A stretch of 14,966 bases of DNA from IMGVR_UViG_3300005856_000048:1-14966, one strand, 5' to 3'; counted from the stretch's first letter, positions 1 to 14,297 are shown. Program-made: numbers and translations. The notes: a model not told the origin generated them from the letters alone.

Positions 1-1898
1 CGTGTGAACCACCTGATGTATGCCCTTATTGCCACGTAGTCTTCCCACAGTTTAGCCCAGTCGTTGGGTATCCTCATTAATTGTATTATTTGCGGTAGCT
101 TATCCATGAATTGGGGTAAGTATTCACTTAACACGGGCATTTCTAAAATGGTGGGGTAGTATGGTGGGGAGTATGCCTTAACTAGGGCATTGGCGAAATC
201 AACGTCTATCCCGTTTGCTAACAATACCTGTAACGCATTCTCAGGTGTTGTTGCATGCCTACCTAGCCATATGCGGGCATAGGTTTCAAAGTTCCTTAGT
301 AAATATCTATGGTAGACTAGATTGGCTATGAATAGGAAGACTTCCCTTGCTTGCGGTGTTTCTCTCATTAACGTTGTTAATTCATCAATGTACTTGGGGA
401 TCTCTGTCTTTGGAATAAGCCCCATGCCTATTATACCCAGGATCCTATACAACGCATACCTTGCGTAGTACCTTATCCTACGGAATGTACCAATCAGTTG
501 CTCTACCTCAAAGTATTTGGCTATGGCGTCGTTGAATGCTGAATCCCAAGTTAGGTGCATTTCCGCACCTGTAATGGATTTGTACAGTGGTGCGTAGTAT
601 TTGTCTAACACAGTTGTGACGTAGCCAACCATATCGTTTATTGAGTCACTGATACCGATCAAGTAGTCTCTGACTCCTGCTAGTAATGCCCTAAACATGT
701 TGCTCATATACGTGTTCACCTTATCCATTAATGCCCTTAGCATTAGTAACTTAGATTCTGGTTCAATGTACCTCACGGGTGCGTTTAACCAACCCGTCAC
801 CCATTTCTGATTATACATGTCAAAGTAGGCTACGTGGACTGATACGGGGAACATGTTGTTCATCATTTGCAATGTGACGGGTATTAACTCTATGTTTTCT
901 CTAATTAGATTCAGCAATCCTGTCCTTAGTAGGGTTTTTGATGCTGTAGTGACGTCAAAGACGGCTCTTAGGGCTATTAATGGGGCTACGTATGGGTGGA
1001 AGCCCCTGGCCATTAACACGTTTGTGACGTAATCAGTGTATATTTGGATTGGTGACGTGGCTTGGGGTTCCACAACCTTACCCAGCACGTCATACATTGT
1101 TGTCTCGTTTGTGATCTTATACTCACGTTCATAGTAGTCCCATATACCATGCCTAACCAGGTGTTCAATGTCGGTTCTGTCTAATAGGTGTGCTGATTGG
1201 TCTATGATTAACCATGCATCGGATGTGTATGATTGACCTGTCCTTGGGTCGTTGATCCATGCAAAGTGAGCTCTACCATGCCATTTCTGATATTCCGCTA
1301 GGGCTAGCAGGGCTAGGTTGTATTGGAAGTTGAGTTTAGCGGGTACCTGTGGGGTGAATGCGTTGATGATTTTAGCTTCAGCTTCCGCAAAGGTTTGGAC
1401 TTCAGGTGGTGGGACATACCAGGCGAATCCCGATAATGCACGCATTGTAAAGTCCCATACCTGGGTTGCTGATGGCAATTCATAAGCCCTTAGGTAGTAC
1501 ATGTAGGCTACGTCGGGTGGAACACCCCTGGCCCACATTGCCTTGACAAACGACTGATATGCTAATGCGGGTTGCTGATTAGGTGGTGCTGATGCAGGTA
1601 GGAATAAGTCCCTTAGCATGAATTCAACCAGGTCGTGGGTAGTGGGTAATTCGAATAGTGGGGCAACAGGTAGGTATCTTACGTTGCCGAATTTATCAAC
1701 CACGGTGATTAAATTGTTTTGTATTTCCTTCCTGTAGTCACTTAATGCCTGGTTGGCAACGTCTATGGATGTGAATGCTGATGGTAATGCTATTGTCTTT
1801 GCAATGAACCAGTATGGGAAGCCTCTATAAATCATTGTATTTGCCACGTTGTTAATGTTCTGTGTGATATCAAACCTACGGGCTATGTCAAGTAATTC
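1..1898 (-). CDS. C-terminal part of the giant minor structural protein (alpha-helical repeats); runs off the left edge
   Basis: Manual translation gives a frame open from 1913 to base 1 (~630 codons): ELLDIARRFDITQNINNVANTMIYRGFPYW...LFELPTTHDLVEFMLRD...YELPSATQVWDFTMR...AIRAYIRWFT. Not in the ORF track, probably because it has no stop in the window. Independent starts are possible (GTG 1847, ATG 1835), but it more likely continues the 774-aa ORF via a -1 shift. Confidence 0.85.
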
Positions 1899-4207
1899 GT
1901 ATGTGACGGTAGTTCAAAGGGCATGTTGCCCATTCCCATTGAGTAGAATGTTAGCCACCACACGTAGCGCCACAGGTAGCGTAGCGGTTCCATGAATGCT
2001 AATGTTCCGCTTAGCGCCATGCCTCTTCCCAATTCATCGCCTAGTTTACCCAATAGATCACCGATTGGTTGTAGTAGTTTCCCTAGTTCTAAACGGATCT
2101 TTAGACCTATGCCTAATGGTGTTAAATCAACTTCCTGTGTCCCAGTTGCTGACCCTATTTTCTCGATTAGTTTCCCTAGGAAGTATATGGATGATGCTAT
2201 TGCGGTTGATATAATAGCCACCGCACCGAATGCGCCTGTTAGGTTTGGTATTGCTACTTTAACGGGGTCTACACCTGACTTTATTACGATGTATGGTTCA
2301 TTTTTGAACACGTCACGTGACATCATAGCGGGTATTTCGGTAATCATCACAGGTAGGAAGATGGCTTTCATTGCACCGTCCACAATACCCTTTGCGAAAT
2401 CCGTTATTCCACTTCCCAAGTTGCCTAAGCCACCTGCTAGCGTTTGCGCTAGTTTAATGAAACCTGAGCCTAGTCCCTGGATTTCATTGACTATCCAGTT
2501 GAATATGTCCTTTAGCGTGTCGTAGAATGACTTAAACGCATTCTCAAACCCCTTGCCGATTGACTCAAATAATTTGATTATTTGTTGCACTACTGGGTTT
2601 TTGCCTAGATTCTCAAAGAACTTGGCTACGTTGCTGAAGAAATCGGTGATTGCCTTGATGTTGATTGTTTTTAGGAAGTCCATGAATGCCTTATACACGG
2701 CGTCAAAGACTTCCTTGGGTATTTGGGATATTGTTTTTGGTAGGTTTTCTATTGCCTTTATGAATCCCTGGAATGACTTATTGATATCATTGAATAGTGT
2801 TTCAAACCCTGAACCTATGGTTCCCAAGTTGCTTACAATTGAACCACTGATTGACGTGAATGTTGCGGTTAATGCATTTGCGAATCCCTGGGCTTCCTTT
2901 ATGAATTTCTCAAAGTTTGACTCAATGCCTTTAACAAATCCCTCAATGTCCTTGCCTAGGGTTGTGAAAAAGCCCGTTACCTTACTGTATGCTTCCTTTC
3001 CGAAATTCTCAATGTCTTTGCCTATTGTTGTAAAGAATGATTCAACGTCTTTAATGAATCCTTGGATGTACTTGCCTGCATCTGTTAATGCACCGTATAT
3101 CATCTTGCCGAATGATTCAACGTCACTGATGAATTGTTTGAAATACTTGCCTGCTGTGTCTATGAAATCGCTAATGTACTTGCCGATTGCCGTGAATGTG
3201 TTCCTTATGTCGTTGCCTATGGTGGTGAACACATTGCTTAACGTGGATGCGAATGACTCAATGCCGTGTAGAATATCCGTTGCTATGTGGGTGAATGTTG
3301 ATTGGACTGTGGATGCGAATGACGTTATTGCGTTGATTGCCGTGGTTATGAATGACTCGATGCGTGGGAATACTATGGATTGTAATACGTGTGCGAATTG
3401 GGATAGTGCGTTTTGTATGGTTGATCCGATTGAGGTTATTGCGTTGATGATACTCGATACTGCATTTTGCACTACACCGCTGATCTGTGTTATGATGCCA
3501 CTTAGCGTTGATGTGAATGATGCGAATGCGGTTTGGATTGTTGATGCAATGCTTGATATTGTTGAAATCACACCTGATAGTGCGTTTTGGATTGATGAAA
3601 CTATGCTTGTTATTGTTGATACTATGCCCGATAGTGTTGATTGGATTGTTGATGATAATTGTGTGGCTAAGCCACCGATTGCCGATGCCAGGTTACTGAA
3701 TTGGCTTGATATTGTCGTTGCAATGCTACTTAAGCTTGATGCCAAGTTACTGAGCCCTGAGCTAACGGTTGATGCAATGCCTGATAATGCCGATGTTATG
3801 CTTGATGCCACGGATTGGAACGTGTTAGCTAAGTTACCTAACCCTGATTGGATTCCGCTTAATGCGCTTGATAATGATGAACTCAATGAGTTTAAAGCCG
3901 ATTGGACTGTTGATGATAGTGTTGATATTCCACTTGATACGTAACTCACGACACTGTTGATTGCGTTTATAACGGGCTGTAGCAATTGCTGAATCCCAGT
4001 TGTAATGTAGTTTGCTAGGTTTGTTAATTGTTGCGCTAGCCAATTTTCTAATTGCCCGATTGGATCAGTTAAGCCACCATATTCAACAATCGCATTGTTG
4101 ATGTCTTCCATTGTTAATTGTGATAATGCCTTCTCAATGATGCCGTTGTTTAGGTTGTTTTGGATTAGGATGCGTATTTCATCGGGATTAAAGAATGGGG
4201 TGTCCAT
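1883..4207 (-). CDS. N-terminal part of giant tape-measure-like / terminal filament protein (774 aa up to the frameshift)
   Basis: Long amphipathic S/T/A/G-rich, then F/K/D/E-rich quasi-repeats (TAGKYFKQFISDVESF / DAGKYIQGFIKDVESF; TIGKDIENFGK / TLGKDIEGFVK), followed by hydrophobic segments. ATG overlaps the upstream stop (TAATG). Confidence 0.8.
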   Translation of the reverse strand: MDTPFFNPDEIRILIQNNLNNGIIEKALSQLTMEDINNAIVEYGGLTDPIGQLENWLAQQLTNLANYITTGIQQLLQPVINAINSVVSYVSSGISTLSSTVQSALNSLSSSLSSALSGIQSGLGNLANTFQSVASSITSALSGIASTVSSGLSNLASSLSSIATTISSQFSNLASAIGGLATQLSSTIQSTLSGIVSTITSIVSSIQNALSGVISTISSIASTIQTAFASFTSTLSGIITQISGVVQNAVSSIINAITSIGSTIQNALSQFAHVLQSIVFPRIESFITTAINAITSFASTVQSTFTHIATDILHGIESFASTLSNVFTTIGNDIRNTFTAIGKYISDFIDTAGKYFKQFISDVESFGKMIYGALTDAGKYIQGFIKDVESFFTTIGKDIENFGKEAYSKVTGFFTTLGKDIEGFVKGIESNFEKFIKEAQGFANALTATFTSISGSIVSNLGTIGSGFETLFNDINKSFQGFIKAIENLPKTISQIPKEVFDAVYKAFMDFLKTINIKAITDFFSNVAKFFENLGKNPVVQQIIKLFESIGKGFENAFKSFYDTLKDIFNWIVNEIQGLGSGFIKLAQTLAGGLGNLGSGITDFAKGIVDGAMKAIFLPVMITEIPAMMSRDVFKNEPYIVIKSGVDPVKVAIPNLTGAFGAVAIISTAIASSIYFLGKLIEKIGSATGTQEVDLTPLGIGLKIRLELGKLLQPIGDLLGKLGDELGRGMALSGTLAFMEPLRYLWRYVWWLTFYSMGMGNMPFELPSHTNYLT

Positions 4208-4457: not shown

Positions 4458-4470
4458 AATTTATTTTTAA
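4458..4470 (-). promoter_or_regulatory. Conserved promoter motif TTAAAAATAAATT
   Basis: Exact consensus copy, 24 nt upstream of GTG 4434. Confidence 0.75.
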
Positions 4471-4493
4471 TGACAGGTGGGGTTAGTATTCGA

Positions 4494-5180
4494 TTATTTG
4501 GATGATCCAGTTGTCGTTTGACCTTGGCTTGGTTGCTGTGTTGGGAAAGGGGATGATGCTGGGGCTATGGTTGTTACTTCCACCTCAGGTGGCTTGGCGT
4601 ATTGTGCAAGTGTAGCCTTTAGTCTATCGCTCATTAATTGACGGATGTCATTATTAACTAACTGGAGACCGTAAAGTGACAGTAGCGTATTCATAAAGTA
4701 AATATTGTTATCAACCTGCTTATTGTAAATGTTTAAGTACCTGTCCTCAGTATAATGCCTATGCATAGTATCCTGTTGAATAAGTGAGAAATACTTATTA
4801 TCCATATCCATAGTGTGACGGGTTGATTCAGCATTGAGAGCCGTGGCTACGTTAAGAGCCGTGGTGGTAGCGGCCACCAACTGATTCATGTTATTAGTCT
4901 GTGAGTTTAGTGCTTGGATTTGGGCTTGGGTTAGCTGGGTTTGGTTGTTTGTGGTGTTGATGGACATGAATATGTAGACACCCAGTGCTATCACCACGGC
5001 TAGGATTAGTATGATGATGCCAGCTGTTATGGGGTCTATGTAGATAACATACCCATTGGATGTTGTTGTGGATTGTGCAAACACTATGTGTGGGTTAGCC
5101 ACCATTAACATGGCTATTATTGACATTACTACCGCTAACTTGCGCTTATCCATGCTTAGGAGACCTGTGAGTGGGTTCAT
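4494..5180 (-). CDS. Membrane protein (228 aa): signal-peptide-like N-terminus, TM helix, Q/N-rich helical region
   Basis: MDKRKLAVVMSIIAMLMVANPHIVFA|QS signal-like segment; hydrophobic ITAGIIILILAVVIALGVYIFMSI; P/T/Q/S-rich tail. Confidence 0.8.
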   Translation of the reverse strand: MNPLTGLLSMDKRKLAVVMSIIAMLMVANPHIVFAQSTTTSNGYVIYIDPITAGIIILILAVVIALGVYIFMSINTTNNQTQLTQAQIQALNSQTNNMNQLVAATTTALNVATALNAESTRHTMDMDNKYFSLIQQDTMHRHYTEDRYLNIYNKQVDNNIYFMNTLLSLYGLQLVNNDIRQLMSDRLKATLAQYAKPPEVEVTTIAPASSPFPTQQPSQGQTTTGSSK

Positions 5181-5206
5181 ATCGTTTTTAATTGACTGTG
5201 TTGTGT

Positions 5207-5219
5207 AATTTATTTTTAA
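5207..5219 (-). promoter_or_regulatory. Conserved promoter motif TTAAAAATAAATT
   Basis: Exact copy, 27 nt upstream of ATG 5180. Confidence 0.75.
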
Positions 5220-5228
5220 TCTGGGTAA

Positions 5229-6005
5229 CTATGGTTTGTTTAGCGGTGTTGGGTAGACCATTGAGCCACTGCACCCTGGGATTCCTGCTTTATCTATGAA
5301 CTGTATTAATAATGCGGGTTCTAGGAGGGCATACTTATCATCACCGTAATTGACAAAGGACTTCCCAACGTCTAAGCCGATTGCGTGTGTTACATAACCC
5401 CAGTATGTGCAATTTAACGTGAGTTTAACATTAACAAGCGCCTTCAAGTCATCCTCAGGCATGTTGGGTGTTGCTAACGCTATGCCTAGGCAATTTTGTT
5501 GGTTAGCGTATAGACAGTTGCCTGCAACGTAGATGGCTCTGGGGTATGGTTCATCGGTTTGGAAGTTGATTGGCGTTGGTGCTTGGAATGTGGCGTAGCC
5601 GTAGTCGTATGGTGACGGTATTTCAATGTTGAAAAAGAGTAGGATGTTCCATATCCATTGTGGGAAGGTGATGGGGTATGTGATTTGAATGTTGCTTAGC
5701 CTGTATGTTGCGTTGCCGTATTGTAAAGTGTCTACGCATTTCATGACATGCCCAGCACTAACAACCGTGTTATTCATTATTTCATAAACTGAGCCACCGC
5801 ATGAACCAGTCAATTTTGGGTATTCACCGTTTGCGTGAAAAAAATCACTCTCACTAATAATAACCTTCCTTCCCTTTTTATCATAGAGTCCATCGGCTTT
5901 TTGAATGAATATTCCCTTGGTTACTAGGTCTTGGATTGTTATGCCGTCCTTAAGCTGAATAACTATGGTTTTGTCTCCTTGGAATAGGGTTTTGAACCGT
6001 GGCAT
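5229..6005 (-). CDS. Chymotrypsin/trypsin-like serine protease (258 aa)
   Basis: SCGGS, VVSAGHV (His86), YDYGY (Asp134) and PGCSGSMVY (Ser246) occur in canonical order and spacing. GGTGA SD at 6009-6013. Confidence 0.75.
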   Translation of the reverse strand: MPRFKTLFQGDKTIVIQLKDGITIQDLVTKGIFIQKADGLYDKKGRKVIISESDFFHANGEYPKLTGSCGGSVYEIMNNTVVSAGHVMKCVDTLQYGNATYRLSNIQITYPITFPQWIWNILLFFNIEIPSPYDYGYATFQAPTPINFQTDEPYPRAIYVAGNCLYANQQNCLGIALATPNMPEDDLKALVNVKLTLNCTYWGYVTHAIGLDVGKSFVNYGDDKYALLEPALLIQFIDKAGIPGCSGSMVYPTPLNKP

Positions 6006-6028
6006 GGTTCACCTTACCCATGCCGTGT

Positions 6029-6041
6029 AATTTATTTTTAA
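6029..6041 (-). promoter_or_regulatory. Conserved promoter motif TTAAAAATAAATT
   Basis: Exact copy, 24 nt upstream of ATG 6005. 6025-6042 is identical over 18 nt to 5203-5220. Confidence 0.75.
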
Positions 6042-6068
6042 TTAAACAATACTACTTGGCTTAACGTT

Positions 6069-7112
6069 TTAATCAATAAGTGATAATGCAATTGTTGGCA
6101 TGATACCGCTTGGTGGTGCGTCGTAAAAGGCAATTGTGTATGTTGTGTAGCTTGATGTTCCACTGCTTGGGTGTCCCGTATAAAATGATACCTGTGTTAA
6201 TGTTGATAATGTAAATGTACTATCTGTGGCTGAGAGAGACTTCCCAGTGAGTGATTCATATGTATACAGGTTTGATGTAGTTGTGTAGTTCCACATGAAA
6301 TAGCCGTAGAATAATTTATTCAGTATGGCGCTGTCACTTACGCTAACTATGCCATTCCATGAGCCATTAACAATCTTTGCCAAGCCATCAGCTGTATTTC
6401 CTACCCCCCACCAGTATGCTTGATATACATTCATGCTACTTGTGTTAATATTATTACCATAGAGGAATCCATATTCAGCGCCACCATTTGTTCCTACACT
6501 GTTTACAAGTGCCCATGTGCGTCCTATGATACCTGTTGATGGTACATTGGATGGTGTTGCTATGAGACCAGTAGAATTCTGGCTACTGGTTACTGTCATT
6601 GTTATCCCGTTGTTTACGCTTATTGTGCCATTACCGTACGTAGTCCATATGCTTGATAGTGTTGTTCCCTTGAAATTATCATAGATTAGGAATACGTTTT
6701 TGCCGTTGTCAAGTTGCCCGTAGGATAAGCCTAGGTAGTTTTGCCCGTAGATTGCGTTAATGCCTGCTATGTTGCCGTCTACTAGTTGTTGCATGGTGTC
6801 TATGATCATGTAAAGCGTGTAGGTGGAATTAGCACCAATGGATGGTGTCTTAACGAACCACCTGTGGTATGCCCCATCATACCCATCATACCATGAGTAT
6901 GCCTGGGTATTTGCCTGTGGGTCATAGAAAATAGTGTTTAGCGGTACCGCATAGGGGTCAATACCAACACCAAGTAGTGAAAGCAAGTAACTATGGTCTA
7001 TTTTGATTTCCTGGACATGTGGGTTTACGGTTGCAGTTGATTGACCGTTTGATATAGTTACCTTGATTACACGCTTCCTAACAGGTAGTATGGTGTATTC
7101 TAGGTCTGGCAT
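6069..7112 (-). CDS. DUF2341-like protein with ConA-like beta-sandwich; putative receptor-binding protein (347 aa)
   Basis: FYDPQANTQAYSWYDG...WFVKTPSIGANSTYTLYM fits the DUF2341 pattern. DNGKNVFLIYDNFKGTTLSSIW is a typical linker into a lectin-like domain. C-terminal PPSGIMP. Confidence 0.7.
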   Translation of the reverse strand: MPDLEYTILPVRKRVIKVTISNGQSTATVNPHVQEIKIDHSYLLSLLGVGIDPYAVPLNTIFYDPQANTQAYSWYDGYDGAYHRWFVKTPSIGANSTYTLYMIIDTMQQLVDGNIAGINAIYGQNYLGLSYGQLDNGKNVFLIYDNFKGTTLSSIWTTYGNGTISVNNGITMTVTSSQNSTGLIATPSNVPSTGIIGRTWALVNSVGTNGGAEYGFLYGNNINTSSMNVYQAYWWGVGNTADGLAKIVNGSWNGIVSVSDSAILNKLFYGYFMWNYTTTSNLYTYESLTGKSLSATDSTFTLSTLTQVSFYTGHPSSGTSSYTTYTIAFYDAPPSGIMPTIALSLID

Positions 7113-7134
7113 TGTGTTTAGTTGATTGGTGATG

Positions 7135-7147
7135 TATTTGTTTTTAA
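7135..7147 (-). promoter_or_regulatory. Promoter motif variant TTAAAAACAAATA
   Basis: 2 mismatches to consensus, 23 nt upstream of ATG 7112. Confidence 0.65.
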
Positions 7148-7151
7148 CCCG

Positions 7152-8933
7152 TCACTGTATGAATCCCTGGGTTAGTGTTGTTGATGGCATGTAGCCCTTG
7201 GGTACAAACTTGGCGTGGTATAGGTTCAGTGGGTTGTTGAACCACACCATTAATGCGTCCTGTGGTGCATCAACGTTAGCGTAGTGTAGGTCAAACCTGT
7301 GGGTTCCGAATGGTATGGTTGCCGTGTATGGTGTTGATTGCATGCTTTGATTTGTCCATGAGCTTAAAATGTTGCTTCCGCCTGATGCCCAATTAGCCCC
7401 ATCACTACCTAACTCACCTGTTAGGCTTAGCCACACGTTGATTGCATCATCAACAAGGACATACATTGTTGATTGTTTACTTGCCTGTACCCAACCGATG
7501 AATTTAGCTAGCCACGTGTAATTGGGGCTTATAGGTGAACCTACACCGCATGAATAGCCTGCTTCCCATGCACTTAACATGTTGGCTTGGCTTGTGCATG
7601 AACTTGATCTACAGTTTGAGTATGAGCCACCGCTTACGGTGCATGGTATTGTGGATGTGAATAGTGATGGTACTGTTTCACAACATTGTTGTAATGTAAC
7701 TGTGAGCGTCCACCCAGTTGAGCTAAACGTAAAGGATTGCGTATTCAAACTTGTTCCAAGCAATGGTTCAACTGTTGGTGAATACGCTACAGGAGGAACG
7801 GTTTGTGATGTGTTAGCCCATATGCTGTATAACAACCCCTGATCCATAATGTTACCGATGTTATCAGTGCTCAATGAACCAGTGATTGTTGAATTAATAC
7901 CGTAATTAACACCGTCAATTGTTGTTGTGTTAGTGGGTATCATGTATATTTGTGTTGATCCACTGTTAAGTTGATTAATCATTGTGTCCGTTGCCTTTAA
8001 CCAAACCACAGCTGTGCCATTGTTGTTTTTTGCATCAACCTCAACCCAGAATGGTACCTTATTCCCACTTGCATCTAGGATGTAAACGTTGCTTAAATCC
8101 TCATTAACGTTAATGTAATTTGACGGTTGAATGGCTATGGGTATTTGCTGGCCACTGGGGTATGTGTAGCCTGGGTTAGTTAATTTAATGACTATGGGTA
8201 GCCACTGTGTCATTGAATTAAGCATTTCATCAATTGCAAGTAGCGCCTCAGTGAGTTTATTCCAATCATGACTAGTCACAATATCGAAAGCTAACTTTCC
8301 GCTCATTTGCATGGGAACGTAGGCAATGGGGTTGAATATGCCTTGTAATTGGGTTGGAACCGTGTAATTGTAGCCGTAAAGGTATGTGAAATAGTAAATG
8401 AACGTGTTGTATGCAAGTAGAATGTGGTTCCAAATTGCATTGTAATGGTCGTGGCTAACTGGGTCACCTACCGTGACGGGTTTAAGCGTGTTCAACATGT
8501 CCATTATCACATTGTACTTTGACGTGAGGTACATTCCCGTGTTTTGATTAACCAGGTTGATTAATTGAATCAGTTGGTAAAGGTATTTGAGTTGGTTAAG
8601 CAGTATGGTGCGCCTATTGTTCCACACGGATGGTGGAATTGTTTGATTGGGGCAATGTGAATAGACTGTTACCCCACCTGAGAGTTGCGAGAAAATGTAG
8701 GGTATTGGGATGCAGACGGGTAGACTAAATGTGATTTTTGAACCAGGGGTTATGACACTCGATAGTGATGGTGGGAGTAGGGATGGTGGTATTGACGTTA
8801 CTACCTGCCTGGTTGGTGTTATTAATGTTTCACTTCCCACTCCTGAATCGCTTAGTGAGAATGCCGTGATTGTGACGCTTACACCACCGCTCGATGCGTC
8901 ACTTGTTACTACTGGATACGCTACGGTGCTCAT
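7152..8933 (-). CDS. Multidomain fibre/adhesin (593 aa): helical repeats, DUF2341, Cys-rich segment, PA14-like domain
   Basis: EDLSNVYILDASGNKVPFWVE...AVVWLK...IYM (DUF2341). AKFIGWV...MYVLVDDAINVWL...GTHRFDLHY...LMVWF (PA14-like, DD at 495-496). Start overlaps the upstream stop (ATGA). Confidence 0.75.
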   Translation of the reverse strand: MSTVAYPVVTSDASSGGVSVTITAFSLSDSGVGSETLITPTRQVVTSIPPSLLPPSLSSVITPGSKITFSLPVCIPIPYIFSQLSGGVTVYSHCPNQTIPPSVWNNRRTILLNQLKYLYQLIQLINLVNQNTGMYLTSKYNVIMDMLNTLKPVTVGDPVSHDHYNAIWNHILLAYNTFIYYFTYLYGYNYTVPTQLQGIFNPIAYVPMQMSGKLAFDIVTSHDWNKLTEALLAIDEMLNSMTQWLPIVIKLTNPGYTYPSGQQIPIAIQPSNYINVNEDLSNVYILDASGNKVPFWVEVDAKNNNGTAVVWLKATDTMINQLNSGSTQIYMIPTNTTTIDGVNYGINSTITGSLSTDNIGNIMDQGLLYSIWANTSQTVPPVAYSPTVEPLLGTSLNTQSFTFSSTGWTLTVTLQQCCETVPSLFTSTIPCTVSGGSYSNCRSSSCTSQANMLSAWEAGYSCGVGSPISPNYTWLAKFIGWVQASKQSTMYVLVDDAINVWLSLTGELGSDGANWASGGSNILSSWTNQSMQSTPYTATIPFGTHRFDLHYANVDAPQDALMVWFNNPLNLYHAKFVPKGYMPSTTLTQGFIQ

Positions 8934-9295
8934 GAACTGAGCACCTGTGTGACAAAGTAATACGGGTAGGATCTTGGTGTGCCACTAATCTGATTGATAG
9001 TTACTTTGATGCCCATGCCTGGTGGGATTTGCAACGTGTGGATTCTTAGGATTGCATTATTAACTGGTCCTGCGAATGTGCGTTGTAGGAACACGTAATA
9101 ATTCGTTCCATCCACTGTAACATAAACCGTGATGGTTGTTATGTCACCGTTTTGCATGTTTTGCAATGATAACCAACCCTCGATGATTGCGTCCGTTTGC
9201 CCACCGCTATATGTGAACACCGTAGTCTCAGTGTTTAAACTACTTAGTGATAATGTTCCGTTGGAATAACTGATTGAGTTTATTACAACTGGCAT
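8930..9295 (-). CDS. Beta-strand-rich hypothetical structural protein (121 aa)
   Basis: GGTGGTGA SD at 9299-9306; alternating hydrophobic beta pattern; coupled to the adhesin gene. Confidence 0.8.
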   Translation of the reverse strand: MPVVINSISYSNGTLSLSSLNTETTVFTYSGGQTDAIIEGWLSLQNMQNGDITTITVYVTVDGTNYYVFLQRTFAGPVNNAILRIHTLQIPPGMGIKVTINQISGTPRSYPYYFVTQVLSS

Positions 9296-9305
9296 GGTTC
9301 ACCAC

Positions 9306-9773
9306 CTATGAGATGCTTAGCGTCATTGTTACTTGCCATGTTTCACCAGGTTGCTTAATACCCATGTTTGCAACTAACCTATCGATCGGTATGTATCCGC
9401 AATTTTGCCCAACGTAGTTTGTAATGGCAACTGCTATTTCGTTCCATTGGAAGTTAGCCATTGTGTCCGTGAATGTTGCCGTGACGGATAGTTGATTATT
9501 GTTTATTGAAACTTGCCCAGGGCTTGAGCATGATTGGATTGAGCCCTGGAGACATGTTTGACTTGCCGATGCGGGTGTTGAACCGTTCCCAACGCATATG
9601 CCCAACGTGACGTTTGTTATGCTACCCACAACAATGTACCAAATTATTTCAACACCGTATGTGAGGAAGATATTACCCTCATAATGCTCAATTGACTTTA
9701 CTACACCGTTCCTATCCTTTTTAACAATGGTTACCTTTGCGGTTCCTTTACCGCTTTCACTATGGCTTACCAT
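9306..9773 (-). CDS. Protein resembling phage tail-collar/baseplate fibre-attachment domain (DUF3751-like), 155 aa
   Basis: Motif series NIFLTYG...ICVGNGSTPASASQTCL...ATFTDTMANFQWNEIAV...DRLVANMGIKQPGETWQVTMTLSI. GGTGA SD at 9780-9784. Confidence 0.6.
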   Translation of the reverse strand: MVSHSESGKGTAKVTIVKKDRNGVVKSIEHYEGNIFLTYGVEIIWYIVVGSITNVTLGICVGNGSTPASASQTCLQGSIQSCSSPGQVSINNNQLSVTATFTDTMANFQWNEIAVAITNYVGQNCGYIPIDRLVANMGIKQPGETWQVTMTLSIS

Positions 9774-9784
9774 TACCCGTCACC

Positions 9785-10426
9785 TCAGTTGCATGTTGAT
9801 GAATTTGTTAATTCCAACAATGCCCTAACGTAGCTGTAGTTCTCTGATCTCAGATAGATCTGGATGGCATCGCAAACGTCTATTTCAATTTGTGTTCCTG
9901 GGAAGATTGGGAAGTGTTGCCCACTTGCCCCACCCACGTAGACCACATAGGTCGTGTCCTGTGTGACATACAGTAGTGCACGCTTGATGGGTGTGCTTGT
10001 ACTTACTAACGATGTTGCCGTGGATAACACGGGTACTACAATGCTCATTAATGCGGTTGGTGAAACATACAGTTTAATTTTCTGAACCGTTTGCTGTACC
10101 TGTTGGACTGTGTTTTGAATGTTAATCAAATAGACTGAAATGTAATTGTAGATTTGATTGATTGCACCCTGCAAAAATTGAGCAATGTAGATGGGATCCA
10201 GGTCATGCAATACCTTATACCCTTCCACGTAAATCTCGTTTCCAAAGAATGCTGATCCAGCTGTGTATAATTCATCAAAGTATGGTGTGAATTGACCGTT
10301 TGTTAGGATGATGTTTGTGTAGTAATTCATTGTGTAGAGTTGATCCACGGCTGACACTAATGCATTCCAATCCGATGAACGCAATACCTGGAATGGCTGT
10401 TTGAATGGTACTCCGAATACGCTCAT
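9785..10426 (-). CDS. Hypothetical fibre-like structural protein (213 aa): SSDWNAL motif, short coiled coil, C-terminal beta domain
   Basis: First gene of a 4-gene unit with the 13-mer 25 nt upstream; INIQNTVQQVQQTVQKIK heptad segment. Confidence 0.75.
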   Translation of the reverse strand: MSVFGVPFKQPFQVLRSSDWNALVSAVDQLYTMNYYTNIILTNGQFTPYFDELYTAGSAFFGNEIYVEGYKVLHDLDPIYIAQFLQGAINQIYNYISVYLINIQNTVQQVQQTVQKIKLYVSPTALMSIVVPVLSTATSLVSTSTPIKRALLYVTQDTTYVVYVGGASGQHFPIFPGTQIEIDVCDAIQIYLRSENYSYVRALLELTNSSTCN

Positions 10427-10450
10427 AGCGTTGTAAAATTGAATAAAACT

Positions 10451-10463
10451 AATTTATTTTTAA
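10451..10463 (-). promoter_or_regulatory. Conserved promoter motif TTAAAAATAAATT
   Basis: Exact copy, 25 nt upstream of ATG 10426. Confidence 0.75.
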
Positions 10464-10478
10464 CCAGAATGAGGGGTG

Positions 10479-10784
10479 TTACTTAGCCCCTAACACATCC
10501 CTCAGTTCCTTAACCTTTTGGACTATTTTGCGTGCTTGCTTAACTACAGGGTGGTTAAGTAGATTGGGGTCATCTAGTGATGCTAATTCCAGGGATAAGT
10601 TGTATGCCTCAGTGACTAATTCCATTAGTTTATCTGTGAATGCCTTGGCTTTGGGGTCTATTGTTTGTTGTTGTAGTGATACATTGGGGATGACTGGGGT
10701 TGTTGTTGGTGTTGGTGGTGTTGTTATGGTGGGTGTCACAATGGACTGTCCTGTCCCTTGAACCCTGGTATCGGACTCAGACAT
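10479..10784 (-). CDS. Hypothetical protein (101 aa): T/P-rich N-terminus and helical hairpin
   Basis: TPTITTPPTPTTTP followed by two amphipathic helices; overlaps the 439-aa gene by 49 nt; TATA box 26 nt upstream. Confidence 0.75.
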   Translation of the reverse strand: MSESDTRVQGTGQSIVTPTITTPPTPTTTPVIPNVSLQQQTIDPKAKAFTDKLMELVTEAYNLSLELASLDDPNLLNHPVVKQARKIVQKVKELRDVLGAK

Positions 10785-12055
10785 ACCGTGCTAAGTAGAT
10801 TAAGCAGGGTATTTAAAGTACTCGGATCTAAACCAAAATTAACCCATTTACTTAGCCATGCCTGGTTGAATGCCTGTAATCCTATGCCTTCCCATGCCCT
10901 GTACCTAACCCTATCGTGATTGTGGTGGAATGCCATGCAGTATTCTACACCTGCATCCTCATATGCGTTAATCAAAAATGGGTTAGCCACCTTGTTCATC
11001 AACATGTTTCTGATTGTTTTTCTAATTGTTTTGATTAATTCCATTGCCCTACCCCACCTTTCCGCACGTGCTGTCAATGGTGCGAATGGTGCGTTTTCAA
11101 TAATGCCTGGGAATGCTTCCTGGAATAATTCCACTAAACTTGGTGGAATAGGTATGTTGGGTATTGCTGGGTCTATGAATGCCGTCTTAATCGCCGTTTG
11201 CAATGGTGAATAATTGTTTTGGACGGCTTCACCAATGCGCCCCACTAACCGTGCGAAATTGAGATTAACCATTGGAACGGGTTCATCAATGAAATACTCA
11301 CCATCCAGGGGGTTCCAATCCAGGACAGTACCCCATAATGCCTGGTCTATCACGGCAAAATGCGGGTATGCGGTTTTTCCGTTTAGTTCACTGATTGTTG
11401 TTAGCCATTGATAAGGCAACACAACATACAGTGGGTTGGTTACGGATTCTGGGGCGAATTGCGAGAAATCAAGTATCATGACGTCCATTGGTGTGGATTT
11501 CTCAATAATCTGCATCACAGTGTTCAACATCTTATTAGCGTAGATGGAAAATCCCTGGTTCACATCCACACCTTGCAAAAATGATGGGGTTGTCATGTTG
11601 CGTGAAACCTTGTTGATTGCTGAACGTAACCATTGCTTAATGTTCACTACCGTGAGCCCTGGATCATAGTAACTATAATCGAATACTGATTGACCGAATA
11701 TAGCCTTTGTGATTTGAGTCTGACTGTAGTTGCTTTGAGCTTCTGGGGCTACAACCGTGATGTTTGGAATGCTAAATGGTGAAATGTTTAGGCTTTGCAG
11801 GTAGTTTGAGAAATCTGGGAATGTGATGTTTATGCCCTGCCACGTGAAATCATCAAACTGGATTGGTACACCTAATGAGATTGCGAATAGGAAGTCTAAC
11901 AATAGTGATGTTTCCATTTCAAAGTTGAATGGGAAGAATTGTATCGTGACACGGCTTGGTAGTACCGTGACGTCTTGCTTATTATTCAGGGTAACCTTAG
12001 CCTGGTGTACACCACCCGTCCCAAAGAGATTATAACTTTGGACTGGGGTGGCCAT
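10736..12055 (-). CDS. Minor virion protein (439 aa) with probable C-terminal MCP-like helical domain
   Basis: Starts 3 nt after the glycosyltransferase stop; AIFGQSVFDYSYYDP motif; C-terminus aligns by eye with the MCP (FGLDPSTLNTL vs YGANPTILQAI). Confidence 0.7.
   Translation of the reverse strand: MATPVQSYNLFGTGGVHQAKVTLNNKQDVTVLPSRVTIQFFPFNFEMETSLLLDFLFAISLGVPIQFDDFTWQGINITFPDFSNYLQSLNISPFSIPNITVVAPEAQSNYSQTQITKAIFGQSVFDYSYYDPGLTVVNIKQWLRSAINKVSRNMTTPSFLQGVDVNQGFSIYANKMLNTVMQIIEKSTPMDVMILDFSQFAPESVTNPLYVVLPYQWLTTISELNGKTAYPHFAVIDQALWGTVLDWNPLDGEYFIDEPVPMVNLNFARLVGRIGEAVQNNYSPLQTAIKTAFIDPAIPNIPIPPSLVELFQEAFPGIIENAPFAPLTARAERWGRAMELIKTIRKTIRNMLMNKVANPFLINAYEDAGVEYCMAFHHNHDRVRYRAWEGIGLQAFNQAWLSKWVNFGLDPSTLNTLLNLLSTVCLSPIPGFKGQDSPL
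10810..10817 (-). promoter_or_regulatory. Canonical archaeal TATA box TTTAAATA inside the 439-aa gene
   Basis: 26 nt upstream of ATG 10784, the same spacing as the other promoters. Confidence 0.45.
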
Positions 12056-12058
12056 TGG

Positions 12059-13108
12059 CTACTCGATGTATTTAACTATTTTAGAGTATAAATTTGTAAT
12101 CGTCATGTCTTTCACGGTATCGTAAGCACGCTTAGCCCTTTCCTCATATTCACCGCTCTTAGCCATATCCACGGCATTAACTATGGCATCGGCTAGGTAC
12201 TGTGGGTCATAGTCATGTAACTCGAATTCTACACCGTTATCAACAATTTCCTTAATGTTATCCCATGGGAAGGTAATGTTGGCTTTAACATCAGCAAACT
12301 CATTGAATGGTTCCATGTTCACGAAAATGGCTAATCTACCTAATGAGTTTGCTTCCAAGACGGGTAGTCCAAATCCTTCCGCAAGCGATGGAACTAGTAC
12401 ATAATCCGCTAGTTTGAATAAGGCAAGGACTTGTTTCCTTGCCATTTGCCCGAATTGCCCCACAACGTAAATTGAATCCTTTGGGGCGTTGGGTAGGACT
12501 TTTTCCATGGTGGGTTTGTCGGCTATGGCAAGTACAATAAACTTTGACCTAACATTCTCGGGTATTTTGTTTAATGCATCAACTAGTTTATGCCAACCCT
12601 TGCGTAGGTGGGATCCTTCCGCTATTGCGAAAATTACCTTGCCTGGGAAGTCACGTTCAATCTTTTTCCTTAGGAATTCGGCATACTCGGTGGCTTCCCT
12701 GTTTTCATCGGGATCATATGCATGGTGGACAATATCCAAAACGTGGTAACCCACCTCACTTAGCTTGTTTGCTGTGTACATCGAGTTTGCGATAAAGTCA
12801 ATGTTGTACCACACGGGGTATCGGGATGGTTCACCATAGGGTGTACCTTCCGTTGTCCCATACCATGCTTGTTTAAGTGATTTTGCGTAGATTTTGTTTG
12901 TTGAATATTGCCCAGCATACCTACCACTCATGGTGGTATTGACAGGGAAAATCCATAGGATGGCGTTTGGACGGTAGAAAAGGAAGTCCTGGTGGATGTA
13001 GTCACTCGATACTTTCACGTCATGCCCCATTGCCCTTGCCACTTTGGCGATGTGTGAGGCTACTATGCTTAGGCTTGGTGCTTTAGCGTGTACAATCATT
13101 AATTTCAT
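12059..13108 (-). CDS. GT4 (GT-B fold) glycosyltransferase (349 aa)
   Basis: FIANS, LRKGW and ADYVLVPSLAEGFGLPVLEA (EX7E signature); adjacent to the MCP gene. Confidence 0.93.
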   Translation of the reverse strand: MKLMIVHAKAPSLSIVASHIAKVARAMGHDVKVSSDYIHQDFLFYRPNAILWIFPVNTTMSGRYAGQYSTNKIYAKSLKQAWYGTTEGTPYGEPSRYPVWYNIDFIANSMYTANKLSEVGYHVLDIVHHAYDPDENREATEYAEFLRKKIERDFPGKVIFAIAEGSHLRKGWHKLVDALNKIPENVRSKFIVLAIADKPTMEKVLPNAPKDSIYVVGQFGQMARKQVLALFKLADYVLVPSLAEGFGLPVLEANSLGRLAIFVNMEPFNEFADVKANITFPWDNIKEIVDNGVEFELHDYDPQYLADAIVNAVDMAKSGEYEERAKRAYDTVKDMTITNLYSKIVKYIE

Positions 13109-13131
13109 GATTGTGGAAGGAAAAAAGGATG

Positions 13132-13144
13132 AATTAATTTTTAA
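13132..13144 (-). promoter_or_regulatory. Promoter motif variant TTAAAAATTAATT
   Basis: 1 mismatch to consensus, 24 nt upstream of ATG 13108. Confidence 0.7.
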
Positions 13145-13168
13145 CTGTTTGATTAGGCTATTGGCTCA

Positions 13169-13555
13169 TTAGTATGATAGACCGCTAACACCCAATGCCT
13201 GGGCAATGGCCTGTAGTATGGTTGGGTTAGCACCGTAAGCGGTCTGGAAGTAAGACGTGAGACCGTTCACCTCATTGGCAAGTGCTGGACCTGTGATACG
13301 TTGTGTCGCATGCCAAACCTTTTCACCAAAGGCTATGTAAACGGCTCTAGTTGGGCCAGCTACACCATACTGATCGAGTATGCCACCTACCAGGAACTGT
13401 ACATTTGCAACGCTTACTATACCCTCCTGTGCCCTGCTTACGGCAACTGGCTGTACTTCAGTGAACCTGGTTTGAACTACTGTAGGGTCGTATTTGGCCT
13501 GCCACTTAGCGAGCCTTGCATTTCCTGGCTTGGGTAAGCCCCTACCCCTGGCCAT
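13169..13555 (-). CDS. Major capsid protein, SIRV2-type alpha-helical fold (128 aa from ATG 13555)
   Basis: MARG...RLAKWQAKY-DPTV...ILDQYGVAGPTRAVYIAFGEKV...GPALANEVNGL...AYGANPTILQAI parallels the recalled SIRV coat protein (RYAKWQAKF...VLTQYGITGPNRAIYQGFGLKV...GPALVNMINGL...AFNANPQVL). ATG 13555 is preferred over the track's TTG 13564. Confidence 0.93.
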   Translation of the reverse strand: MARGRGLPKPGNARLAKWQAKYDPTVVQTRFTEVQPVAVSRAQEGIVSVANVQFLVGGILDQYGVAGPTRAVYIAFGEKVWHATQRITGPALANEVNGLTSYFQTAYGANPTILQAIAQALGVSGLSY

Positions 13556-13580
13556 ATTGGTCAAAAACCTTATCCGCCAT

Positions 13581-13593
13581 GTTTTATTTTACT
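13581..13593 (-). promoter_or_regulatory. Degenerate promoter motif AGTAAAATAAAAC upstream of MCP
   Basis: AAAATAAA core 26 nt upstream of ATG 13555. Confidence 0.5.
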
Positions 13594-13740
13594 GTTATTC
13601 TTTTACACTGTGCTTAATGCTCAATATTACTTACAATTACTTATGATTAATGCTAATCATTCATTATGTATTGGGATTACATGCTTTCATGGGTTGTGTT
13701 GGGGCTTGTAACAGGGGTTATGTGTACATTGTTTGCGTGA

Positions 13741-13753
13741 TTAAAAATAAAAT
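13741..13753 (+). promoter_or_regulatory. Promoter motif variant TTAAAAATAAAAT
   Basis: 1 mismatch, plus strand, 23 nt before in-frame GTG 13776. Confidence 0.65.
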
Positions 13754-13784
13754 ACTGACTGTGTGTGTTTCCCAGGTGGTGTAT

Positions 13785-13994
13785 GTGAGTGATGGGGATG
13801 CAAGGAATAGGCGCATAATGATACTTTCGAATGTGGAAACACGACCATCGAAACTTGTTAGTGGGCTTGTTTCCTACATATCGAAATACCTCATTAGTGT
13901 TGATTATGAGATTCATCAACGTTATGATGGGAATGATGTAGTGATTGAGGTTAGGATTAAGAATCTTGCCGAAATGATCAATAAGTATGGTTAA
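13785..13994 (+). CDS. Small alpha/beta hypothetical protein (~69 aa; start GTG 13785 or 13776, not 13650)
   Basis: Promoter motif at 13741 and GGTGGTG SD-like sequence at 13775-13781 place the start here. Apparent paralog of the next gene. Confidence 0.7.
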   Translation: MSDGDARNRRIMILSNVETRPSKLVSGLVSYISKYLISVDYEIHQRYDGNDVVIEVRIKNLAEMINKYG

Positions 13995-14003
13995 AAATAA
14001 ATA
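13991..14003 (+). promoter_or_regulatory. Promoter motif variant TTAAAAATAAATA
   Basis: Overlaps the upstream stop codon; 25 nt before ATG 14028. Confidence 0.7.
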
Positions 14004-14255: not shown

Positions 14256-14297
14256 TGACGGTTATAGAGTTAAATAGTTTTGTTTAAAATTAAAATC

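What the first reader, a model, noticed from the sequence alone, without database searches (positions are those of the whole stretch)
4458..14003. Virus-specific 13-mer promoter TTAAAAATAAATT defines the transcription map
Seen: exact copies at 4458, 5207, 6029 and 10451 (-); 1-2 mismatch copies at 7135, 13132 (-), 13741 and 13991 (+); a degenerate copy at 13581 (-). Each is oriented with the downstream gene and lies 23-27 nt from a start codon. Genes without it are mostly coupled by overlap, a 3-nt gap or a GGTGA SD (4207, 8933, 9295, 9773, 12055). Known: archaeal TATA boxes sit at about this distance from leaderless starts. Inference: the TATA position reads AATAAATT rather than TTTAWATA, and near-invariance over 13 nt suggests a late promoter or a viral activator site. 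Implied units: MCP | GT-439aa | 101aa | 213-155-121-593aa | 347aa | protease | 228aa | 75aa-giant.
Basis: partly seen in the sequence, partly recalled or inferred. Interest (0 to 1): 0.65.

Follow-up and report, generated by a model that had tools for sequence, protein, structure and literature searches.

The report
Lineage-specific promoter word of rudivirus-like viruses
A 13-base word repeated in front of ten gene blocks of a hot-spring archaeal rod-virus fragment is almost certainly its core promoter; related viruses keep it at the same place but each lineage has its own version, a new variant of something already known in rudiviruses.

Summary
TTAAAAATAAATT occurs 4 times exactly and 5 times with 1-2 mismatches, against 1.5 expected. 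It is the most repeated 11-13-mer in the window. All copies lie in the 4.7% of non-coding DNA, point towards the next gene and end 22-26 nt before its start codon (31 nt for one). The window is a whole IMG/VR record from a divergent rudivirus-like virus: its coat protein is about 40% identical to those of all known Rudiviridae. More than 80 related hot-spring contigs keep a word at the same place before the same genes, while flanks and spacers diverge. The word is lineage-specific: ...AAT... here, ...AAC... in a sister lineage (9 of 10 orthologous promoters), TAAAAAATAAA in low-GC lineages, and GATAGAGAWATT-like in 56-60% GC lineages. Genes without it are overlapped, 3 nt apart or carry GGTG-type ribosome sites. 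Best reading: a BRE/TATA-position core promoter driving leaderless mRNAs of the conserved virion/core module. It resembles the SIRV "TATA+GTC" promoters but lacks GTC. Not shown: transcription start sites (no RNA runs hold the virus), the host and its consensus, and which 8 bases TBP binds. A dedicated viral or host factor is not excluded. Verdict: new variant of a known kind, moderate interest.

The parts
4458..4470 (-). exact 13-mer; 23 nt before GTG 4434; starts the unit 75-aa gene + giant tape-measure-like/terminal-fibre-like gene
   Evidence: kept before the orthologous gene in lineages A, B, C, E and H
5207..5219 (-). exact 13-mer; 26 nt before ATG 5180 (228-aa membrane/coiled-coil protein)
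6029..6041 (-). exact 13-mer; 23 nt before ATG 6005 (258-aa protein with chymotrypsin-like GxCGG/GCSGS motifs)
   Evidence: the 18 bases 6025-6042 are identical to 5203-5220
7135..7147 (-). TTAAAAACAAATA variant; 22 nt before ATG 7112 (347-aa protein, phrog_7548)
10451..10463 (-). exact 13-mer; 24 nt before ATG 10426; starts the unit 213-155-121-593 aa, whose internal genes have GGTGA/AGGTG sites or overlap
13132..13144 (-). TTAAAAATTAATT; 23 nt before ATG 13108; starts the unit GT (349 aa) - 439 aa (- 101 aa)
13581..13593 (-). degenerate copy AGTAAAATAAAAC (8/13); 25 nt before ATG 13555 of the major capsid protein
   Evidence: Lineage B carries an exact TTAAAAATAAATT before its MCP gene, 28 nt before the ATG against 25 nt here
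13741..13753 (+). TTAAAAATAAAAT; 25 nt before GTG 13779 (71-aa gene, divergent from the MCP gene)
13991..14003 (+). TTAAAAATAAATA; 24 nt before ATG 14028 (75-aa protein conserved across the clade)
14284..14296 (+). TTAAAATTAAAAT (2 mismatches); 31 nt before ATG 14328 of the second glycosyltransferase; the weakest member
7152..10426 (-). four-gene operon (213, 155, 121, 593 aa) with no internal copy of the word; coupled by SD-like GGTGA/AGGTG sites and a 4-nt overlap
13169..13555 (-). major capsid protein gene (128 aa from ATG 13555), rudivirus type
   Evidence: Pfam Sulf_coat_C E=1.3e-25; about 40% identity to all Rudiviridae MCPs

Best explanation
The word (consensus R-TTAAAAAYAAATW) is the core promoter element of the conserved virion/core gene module of a new rudivirus-like virus clade from hot springs. 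It occupies the place of the archaeal BRE plus TATA box, about -37 to -24 from the start codon. It is read in one orientation by the host's TBP/TFB/RNA polymerase and starts leaderless or nearly leaderless mRNAs at, or a few bases before, the start codon. Downstream genes of each unit are translated through SD-type sites or coupling. In the favoured register, R-TTAAA is the BRE and AAYAAATW sits at the TATA place. Shown: enrichment, orientation, spacing, intergenic confinement, conservation before orthologous genes, and lineage-specific versions. Inferred: binding by TBP/TFB, the start sites, the register, and any timing (middle/late).
For: Enrichment is 9 matches against 1.47 expected, and the word is the top repeated 11-13-mer. 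All ten sites lie in the 4.7% non-coding DNA, are co-oriented with the next gene, and nine of ten end 22-26 nt before the start codon. Phylogenetic footprint: in relatives of 75-89% nucleotide identity, and in more than 80 metagenome contigs, the word is kept before the same genes while flanks and spacers diverge. In the complete 26.8-kb relative G002 (558-bp ITRs), 12 unit starts carry it: one at 2.8 kb and the rest in the 7.7-16.7 kb core. Coupled genes do not carry it. SD-like sites precede 4 of 6 genes without the word and 2 of 10 genes with it; in crenarchaea, first genes of units are commonly leaderless and internal genes carry an SD. Place: in SIRV2 the A/T box that precedes GTC ends 20-25 nt before the start codon in 14 of 22 promoters, which is the place of the last 8 bases of this word. 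BRE rule (purine at -6 and A at -3 from the TATA start; PMC11065993): the base before the word is a purine in 29 of 30 copies, and position 3 is always A.
Against: No transcription start is mapped: no public RNA run holds the virus. The host is unknown and no archaeal genome could be reached, so 'different from the host consensus' is untested. The sister lineage has C at what would be TATA position 3 (AACAAATT), and the high-GC lineages have G-containing words (GATAGAGAWATT). Both are poor TBP sites by textbook criteria. The first 8 bases, TTAAAAAT, equal the TATA box of MRV1 and SIRV2 promoters, which suggests the other register with 4-9-nt leaders. The most expressed gene expected, the MCP gene, has only a degenerate copy in the window's lineage. 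The 258-aa gene has a GGTGA in its spacer that a leaderless mRNA would not contain.
Confidence: 0.75

Rival explanations
1. The word is mainly the binding site of a dedicated sequence-specific factor, virus-encoded or a host activator like Sta1. The factor overlaps or replaces a weak TATA box and switches on the core/virion module together. Promoter word and factor co-evolve, which would explain the 13-nt invariance and the lineage-wide changes.
For: The invariance is much stronger than in SIRV2, ARV1 or MRV1, where no promoter word is among the top repeated 11-13-mers. There is a concerted switch: lineage B has C at position 8 in 9 of 10 orthologous promoters where lineages A, C, D and E have T. 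High-GC lineages use GATAGMGAW at the same place although the MCP stays 72-74% identical. Lineages with different words occur in the same samples (contig names). The arms of the same genomes use other A/T boxes. Candidate regulators exist: RHH_1 proteins in G002 and G003. Precedents: Sta1 binds the SIRV1 core promoter (PMC1635249), and MRV1 encodes a TFB homologue.
Against: No factor is identified. No TFB or TBP homologue was found by tblastn or Pfam in any genome of the clade. The word is not a palindrome, as dimeric RHH or wHTH sites usually are. Its place and A/T richness are fully explained by BRE+TATA. Different words could reflect different hosts.
Confidence: 0.25
2. The word is simply the ordinary strong BRE-TATA consensus of the unknown host. 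Each virus lineage mirrors its own host, and nothing is virus-specific.
For: Virus GC content tracks the word type: 35-42% for A/T words and 56-60% for GATAG words. Strong viral promoters in Sulfolobales viruses share their BRE/TATA with highly expressed host genes (PMC11065993). Binning hints point to different hosts: a Thermoproteus sp. MAG for a high-GC contig and a Cand. Nanopusillus acidilobi MAG for lineage D.
Against: Lineages A, B and C have the same GC content (41-42%) and occur in the same springs, yet differ by the concerted T/C change. In G002 and G003 the arm genes use other boxes, such as TATATAAAAT, CTTATAAA, TTTATAAA and ATTTAAAAACC. Textbook crenarchaeal TATA consensus (TTTAWATA; PMC11065993) differs from both registers. 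The host was not examined, so this rival is weakened, not excluded.
Confidence: 0.2
3. The word is a non-transcriptional repeat: a terminator, a packaging or replication signal, or a recombination site.
For: Its reverse complement is T-rich (AATTTATTTTTAA), and short intergenic repeats can serve several roles.
Against: The word has a strict orientation with the downstream gene on both strands. It keeps a fixed 22-26 nt distance to start codons rather than to stop codons. It is absent from the ITRs. On the coding strand it is A-rich, not the oligo-T of archaeal terminators.
Confidence: 0.03

Closest known systems
SIRV1/SIRV2 promoters: BRE + TATA box + virus-specific GTC element (Kessler et al. 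2004, as summarised in PMC1635249 and PMC5569661)
   Same: Same virus kind (rudivirus-type MCP). An A/T box sits at the same distance from the start codon: 20-25 nt in 14 of 22 SIRV2 promoters against 22-26 nt here. A virus-wide extra conserved element joins the TATA box. Transcripts are mostly leaderless.
   Different: There is no GTC: the bases after TTAAAAAT are AAATT. The conserved block is 13-14 nt and nearly invariant, whereas the SIRV2, ARV1 and MRV1 promoters are too variable to appear among repeated 11-13-mers. Here the word is confined to the central core module.
Per-virus consensus regulatory sequences of early/anti-defence genes in archaeal viruses (PMC11065993)
   Same: Each virus has its own highly conserved sequence around the BRE/TATA of a set of genes, and it can be found by motif search within a single genome.
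   Different: Those carry a canonical TTTAWATA box with a purine-rich BRE and 30-75 bp of conserved flanks, and they precede small variable genes at the genome ends. This word is about 14 nt, non-canonical, and precedes conserved structural/core genes (MCP, two GTs, giant fibre-like protein) in the genome centre.
Sta1-activated SIRV1 promoters and the virus-encoded TFB homologue of MRV1
   Same: Both are precedents for factor-assisted or re-targeted initiation at rudiviral core promoters (PMC1635249; annotation of NC_074633.1).
   Different: No Sta1-type 16-bp inverted repeat (ATNT-N8-WNAT) was examined or is evident in the 13-mer. No TFB homologue is detectable in this clade (and the Pfam calls).

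Membership tests
Archaeal BRE/TATA core promoter | A/T-rich 8-bp box centred about 26-27 nt upstream of the transcription start | tested here: inconclusive
   The word ends 22-26 nt before the start codon in 9 of 10 sites. This fits if the mRNAs are leaderless. No start sites are available.
Archaeal BRE/TATA core promoter | Purine-rich BRE directly upstream that sets orientation (purine/G at -6 and A at -3 from the TATA start, PMC11065993) | tested here: met
   With the TATA box taken as the last 8 bases, -6 is a purine in 29 of 30 copies and -3 is always A. This is not met in the other register.
Archaeal BRE/TATA core promoter | Co-orientation with the downstream gene, and location in intergenic DNA at unit starts | tested here: met
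   10 of 10 sites in the window; 12 unit starts in G002.
Archaeal BRE/TATA core promoter | Binding of TBP and TFB, and accurate initiation in vitro | not testable with these tools
   Needs biochemistry with the proteins of the (unknown) host.
Rudiviral TATA+GTC promoter (SIRV type) | GTC trinucleotide directly after the TATA box | tested here: not met
   0 of 10 sites have GTC after either candidate box. SIRV2 has 22 such promoters, ARV1 has TGTCC, and MRV1 has TGTAA.
Rudiviral TATA+GTC promoter (SIRV type) | Present in the majority of the virus's promoters | tested here: inconclusive
   In G002 it is found at 12 unit starts, against about 13 unit starts in the arms that lack it.
Early/anti-defence-gene regulatory sequence (PMC11065993) | Canonical strong TATA (TTTAWATA) with long conserved flanks, before small variable terminal genes | tested here: not met
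   The word is non-canonical. Conservation is limited to 14-18 nt. The genes served are the conserved core genes.
Rudiviridae-like virus (for the window itself) | SIRV-type major capsid protein; linear genome with inverted terminal repeats; glycosyltransferases and a giant terminal protein | tested here: met
   Sulf_coat_C E=1e-25. About 40% identity to all Rudiviridae MCPs. ITRs of 558 bp in the 26.8-kb relative. Two GT4 genes and an 1856-aa protein in G002. Family rank was not assessed.

The most novel reading that the evidence does not exclude
The word is the target of a lineage-specific initiation-specificity factor: a virus-encoded protein, or a virus-modified host TFB/TBP. The factor would commit the host polymerase to the virion module. 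Promoter word and factor would then have co-evolved across the clade, from TTAAAAATAAATT to TTAAAAACAAATT, TAAAAAATAAA and GATAGAGAAATT, giving at least 8 parallel substitutions in one lineage. That would be an archaeal-virus counterpart of phage late-promoter switching.
Probability: 0.2. Interest if true: 0.8.

Novelty: new variant of a known kind. Interest (0 to 1): 0.5.

Why it matters
Archaeal viruses rely on host TBP/TFB/RNA polymerase. How they direct it to their own genes is known only in fragments: the SIRV GTC element, Sta1, SvtR, and the early-gene consensus sequences. This clade offers an unusually clean natural experiment. Ten orthologous promoters per genome keep one short word at a fixed place, and the word changes in concert between lineages that share 72-92% identical coat proteins and the same springs. 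That makes promoter-factor co-evolution in archaea directly testable by swapping single bases in vitro. It also gives a simple rule for annotating gene starts and operons in uncultivated rudivirus-like genomes. The clade itself, more than 80 contigs spanning 35-60% GC and possibly infecting hosts outside Sulfolobales, widens the known range of rudivirus-type viruses.

Tried and rejected
- RNA evidence: the look-up of sequencing runs found 24 DNA holders, all hot-spring, aquatic or synthetic metagenomes, and no RNA run.
- Host genome, MCP route: the MCP scan of genome contigs found nothing.
Loci from NCBI MAG contigs gave no handle.
- Host genome, GT route: the GT-alignment scan returned 80 loci with no Thermoproteota among them. 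The host promoter consensus and CRISPR-spacer matching therefore could not be done.
- Viral TFB: the MRV1 TFB has no tblastn match in G000-G004. Pfam scans of about 65 ORFs of the window, G002 and G003 gave only MCP, GT4, a methyltransferase, RHH_1 and a weak LSM match.
- Genome-wide 8-mer enrichment was uninformative, because coding repeats dominate. Counting 11-13-mers worked.
- Literature: no paper holds any of the words in a relevant context. Kessler 2004 (PMC524901) is not held, so it is cited through PMC1635249 and PMC5569661.
- Rfam: no RNA family in the window.
- Terminator, packaging or replication-signal readings were rejected on orientation and spacing.
- No alternative genetic code was used. 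No complex or structure job was run, because no binding claim is made.
Full report
**What the window is.** The 14,966-base window is a complete IMG/VR record, a linear fragment. ORF 13169-13555 (-) matches Pfam Sulf_coat_C at E=1.3e-25. It is 38-44% identical to the major capsid proteins of all 42 rudivirus records in the phage collection. The rest of the window encodes:
- two GT4 glycosyltransferases;
- a tape-measure-like/coiled-coil giant protein;
- a weak DUF2341 match in the 593-aa protein;
- otherwise ORFans.

Four IMG/VR relatives exist. G002 is 26.8 kb, about 89% identical in nucleotides, and has perfect 558-bp inverted terminal repeats, so it serves as a near-complete reference. G003 is 26.2 kb and 75-78% identical. 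The window is therefore part of a divergent rudivirus-like virus from hot springs. All 24 sequencing runs that hold it are DNA metagenomes, mostly from hot springs.

**The observation.**
- TTAAAAATAAATT occurs exactly at 4458, 5207, 6029 and 10451 (-).
- It occurs with 1-2 mismatches at 7135 and 13132 (-) and at 13741, 13991 and 14284 (+).
- That is 9 matches against 1.47 expected, and no shuffle of 200 reached 9.
- Without any prior, it is the most repeated 11-, 12- and 13-mer of the window, of G002 and (as TTAAAAACAAATT) of G003.
- A tenth, degenerate copy (8/13) lies before the capsid gene.
- After three start codons are corrected by comparison with relatives (MCP ATG 13555, 71-aa gene GTG 13779, second GT ATG 14328), only 710 nt (4.7%) of the window is non-coding. 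All ten sites lie there.
- Every site points towards the next gene. The bases between word and start codon number 23, 26, 23, 22, 24, 23, 25, 25, 24 and 31.
- The base before the word is a purine in 29 of 30 copies across G000, G002 and G003.
- Genes without the word are overlapped (4207, 8933), 3 nt apart (12055), or preceded by GGTGA/AGGTG/GGTGG (4207, 8933, 9295, 9773).

**Comparative evidence that it is functional.** In the two sub-clades (G000/1/2 and G003/4) the word is kept before the orthologous 75-aa, 228-aa, 258-aa, 347-aa, 213-aa, GT349, 71-aa, 75-aa(b), second-GT and MCP genes. The sequences on either side, including the spacer to the start codon, are largely different.

A word search with the GT and a metagenome scan with an MCP alignment brought in more than 80 further contigs. 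A word at the same place precedes the same genes in all of them.

In the complete relative G002, 12 unit starts carry the word: one at 2.8 kb and the rest in the 7.7-16.7 kb core. About 13 unit starts in the two arms use other A/T boxes. Tightly coupled genes have none.

**Lineage-specific versions.** One version dominates each contig.
- The window's lineage A, and lineages C and E, have T at position 8.
- Lineage B (G003-like) has C at position 8 in 9 of 10 orthologous promoters. Only its MCP promoter keeps T.
- Lineages D and F (GC 37-41%) use TAAAAAATAAA.
- Lineages of 56-60% GC use GATAGMGAW. Examples are GATAGAGATAT and GATAGAGAAATT, ending 21-24 nt before the start codon. Their MCPs remain 72-74% identical to the window's.
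- Because the outgroups have T, lineage B must have acquired at least 8 parallel T-to-C changes.
- Contigs of several lineages come from the same samples, as the contig name prefixes show.

**How it most likely works.** Place, A/T richness, strict orientation and the leaderless/SD dichotomy are those of a crenarchaeal BRE+TATA core promoter.

For calibration I used SIRV2. Its promoters have a TATA box followed by the virus-specific GTC (Kessler 2004, cited through PMC1635249 and PMC5569661). There the 8-bp A/T box ends 20-25 nt before the start codon in 14 of 22 cases. The last 8 bases of the present word (AAYAAATW) occupy exactly that place. The preceding R-TTAAA then satisfies the BRE rule of a purine at -6 and A at -3 (PMC11065993).

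Three points argue against that register:
- C at TATA position 3 in lineage B, and G-rich words in the high-GC lineages, are poor TBP sites.
- The first 8 bases, TTAAAAAT, are identical to the TATA box of MRV1 and of several SIRV2 promoters. That would imply 4-9-nt leaders.
- The AAATT would then be an element standing where SIRV has GTC.

Only mapping of transcription starts can decide, and no RNA run holds the virus.

**Rivals.** A dedicated factor, viral or host, remains possible. It is the best explanation for the 13-nt invariance and the concerted changes. Both complete relatives encode RHH_1 regulators. The rudivirus MRV1 even encodes a TFB homologue, but none is detectable in this clade (and all Pfam scans).

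The reading 'ordinary host consensus' could not be tested, because no archaeal genome handle could be obtained. It is weakened by other box types within the same genomes and by co-occurring lineages of equal GC content that use different words. Binning labels (a Thermoproteus sp. MAG and a Cand. Nanopusillus acidilobi MAG) are weak hints that hosts may lie outside Sulfolobales.

Non-transcriptional roles are excluded by orientation and spacing.

**Comparison with what is known, and novelty.** Conserved virus-specific promoter elements are established in rudiviruses: the GTC element, Sta1 sites and the early/anti-defence consensus sequences.
- This word fails the defining feature of the SIRV type, because it has no GTC.
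- It fails those of the early-gene type, because it has no TTTAWATA box, no long conserved flanks, and serves core rather than terminal genes.
- It works like both.

It is therefore a new variant of a known kind, in an apparently undescribed clade. No paper contains the words in a relevant context.

The 101-aa ORF has no copy. 'Protease' for the 258-aa protein rests only on GxCGG/GCSGS-type motifs, without a family hit.

**Limits.** There are no start sites and no host. Gene calls in relatives are simple ORF calls. Lineage labels A-H are mine, based on MCP identity, GC content and word type, not on a tree. No referred steps.

Noticed in passing
window 1847-1910 (-): The giant gene is one 1856-aa ORF in G002 (16958-22528). 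In the window it is split into 774-aa and 615-aa ORFs by a net 1-nt indel (2-nt gap plus 1-nt insertion against G002). This is either a real frameshift or an assembly error.
   Followed up: partly
window 13121-13126 (-), inside the GT349 promoter spacer: A T6 run lies between the promoter word and the GT start, just downstream of the MCP gene. T-rich runs occur at or next to this promoter in all lineages. It may be a terminator for the abundant MCP mRNA, nested in the next promoter.
   Followed up: no
window 5229-6005 (-): The 258-aa protein has GSCGGSVY...GHV and GIPGCSGSMVY motifs that resemble a chymotrypsin-like serine/cysteine protease, but it has no Pfam or PHROG hit.
   Followed up: partly
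window 6000-6013 and 9290-9303: An identical 14-nt translation-start context, GGTGAACCATGCCA (read on the - strand), precedes the 258-aa gene (which has the promoter word) and the internal 121-aa gene. The SD before the 258-aa gene would only be used on read-through transcripts.
   Followed up: no
window 13594-13740: A 147-nt stretch without ORF or word lies between the divergent MCP and 71-aa promoters. It is the longest non-coding stretch of the window and could hold regulator sites, as upstream of the SIRV1 MCP promoter.
   Followed up: no
window 10479-10784 (-): The 101-aa ORF overlaps the end of the 439-aa gene by 49 nt. It has TTTAAATA 25 nt before its ATG instead of the word, and it is conserved in all lineages (89-101 aa). 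It may have an internal canonical promoter, or be translated by coupling.
   Followed up: partly
window 2660-4100 (-): The N-terminal part of the giant protein contains diverged direct repeats about 111-120 nt apart (families D1-D6). This is the source of the over-represented 8-mer CAATCAAC on the coding (-) strand, found as GTTGATTG on the + strand.
   Followed up: no
G003 (L011) 2828-2849: Two copies of the word on opposite strands overlap to form the palindrome TTAG[GA]AACAAATTTGTT[TC]CTAA between divergent genes (an LSM-like 72-aa protein and a methyltransferase). This looks like a back-to-back promoter pair.
   Followed up: no
L173 and L174 (high-GC relatives), e.g. L173 732, 6615, 10839, 14687: The perfect palindrome GATGTATACATC, flanked by GGGGG and A/T-rich sequence, recurs four times per contig. 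It is distinct from the promoter word and its role is unknown.
   Followed up: partly
L017 (MRV1, NC_074633.1) 19288-20136 (-): Metallosphaera rod-shaped virus 1 is annotated with a 282-aa TFB homologue at its right end. Its own promoters read TTAAAAATGTAA. This is relevant to how rudiviruses might retarget initiation.
   Followed up: partly
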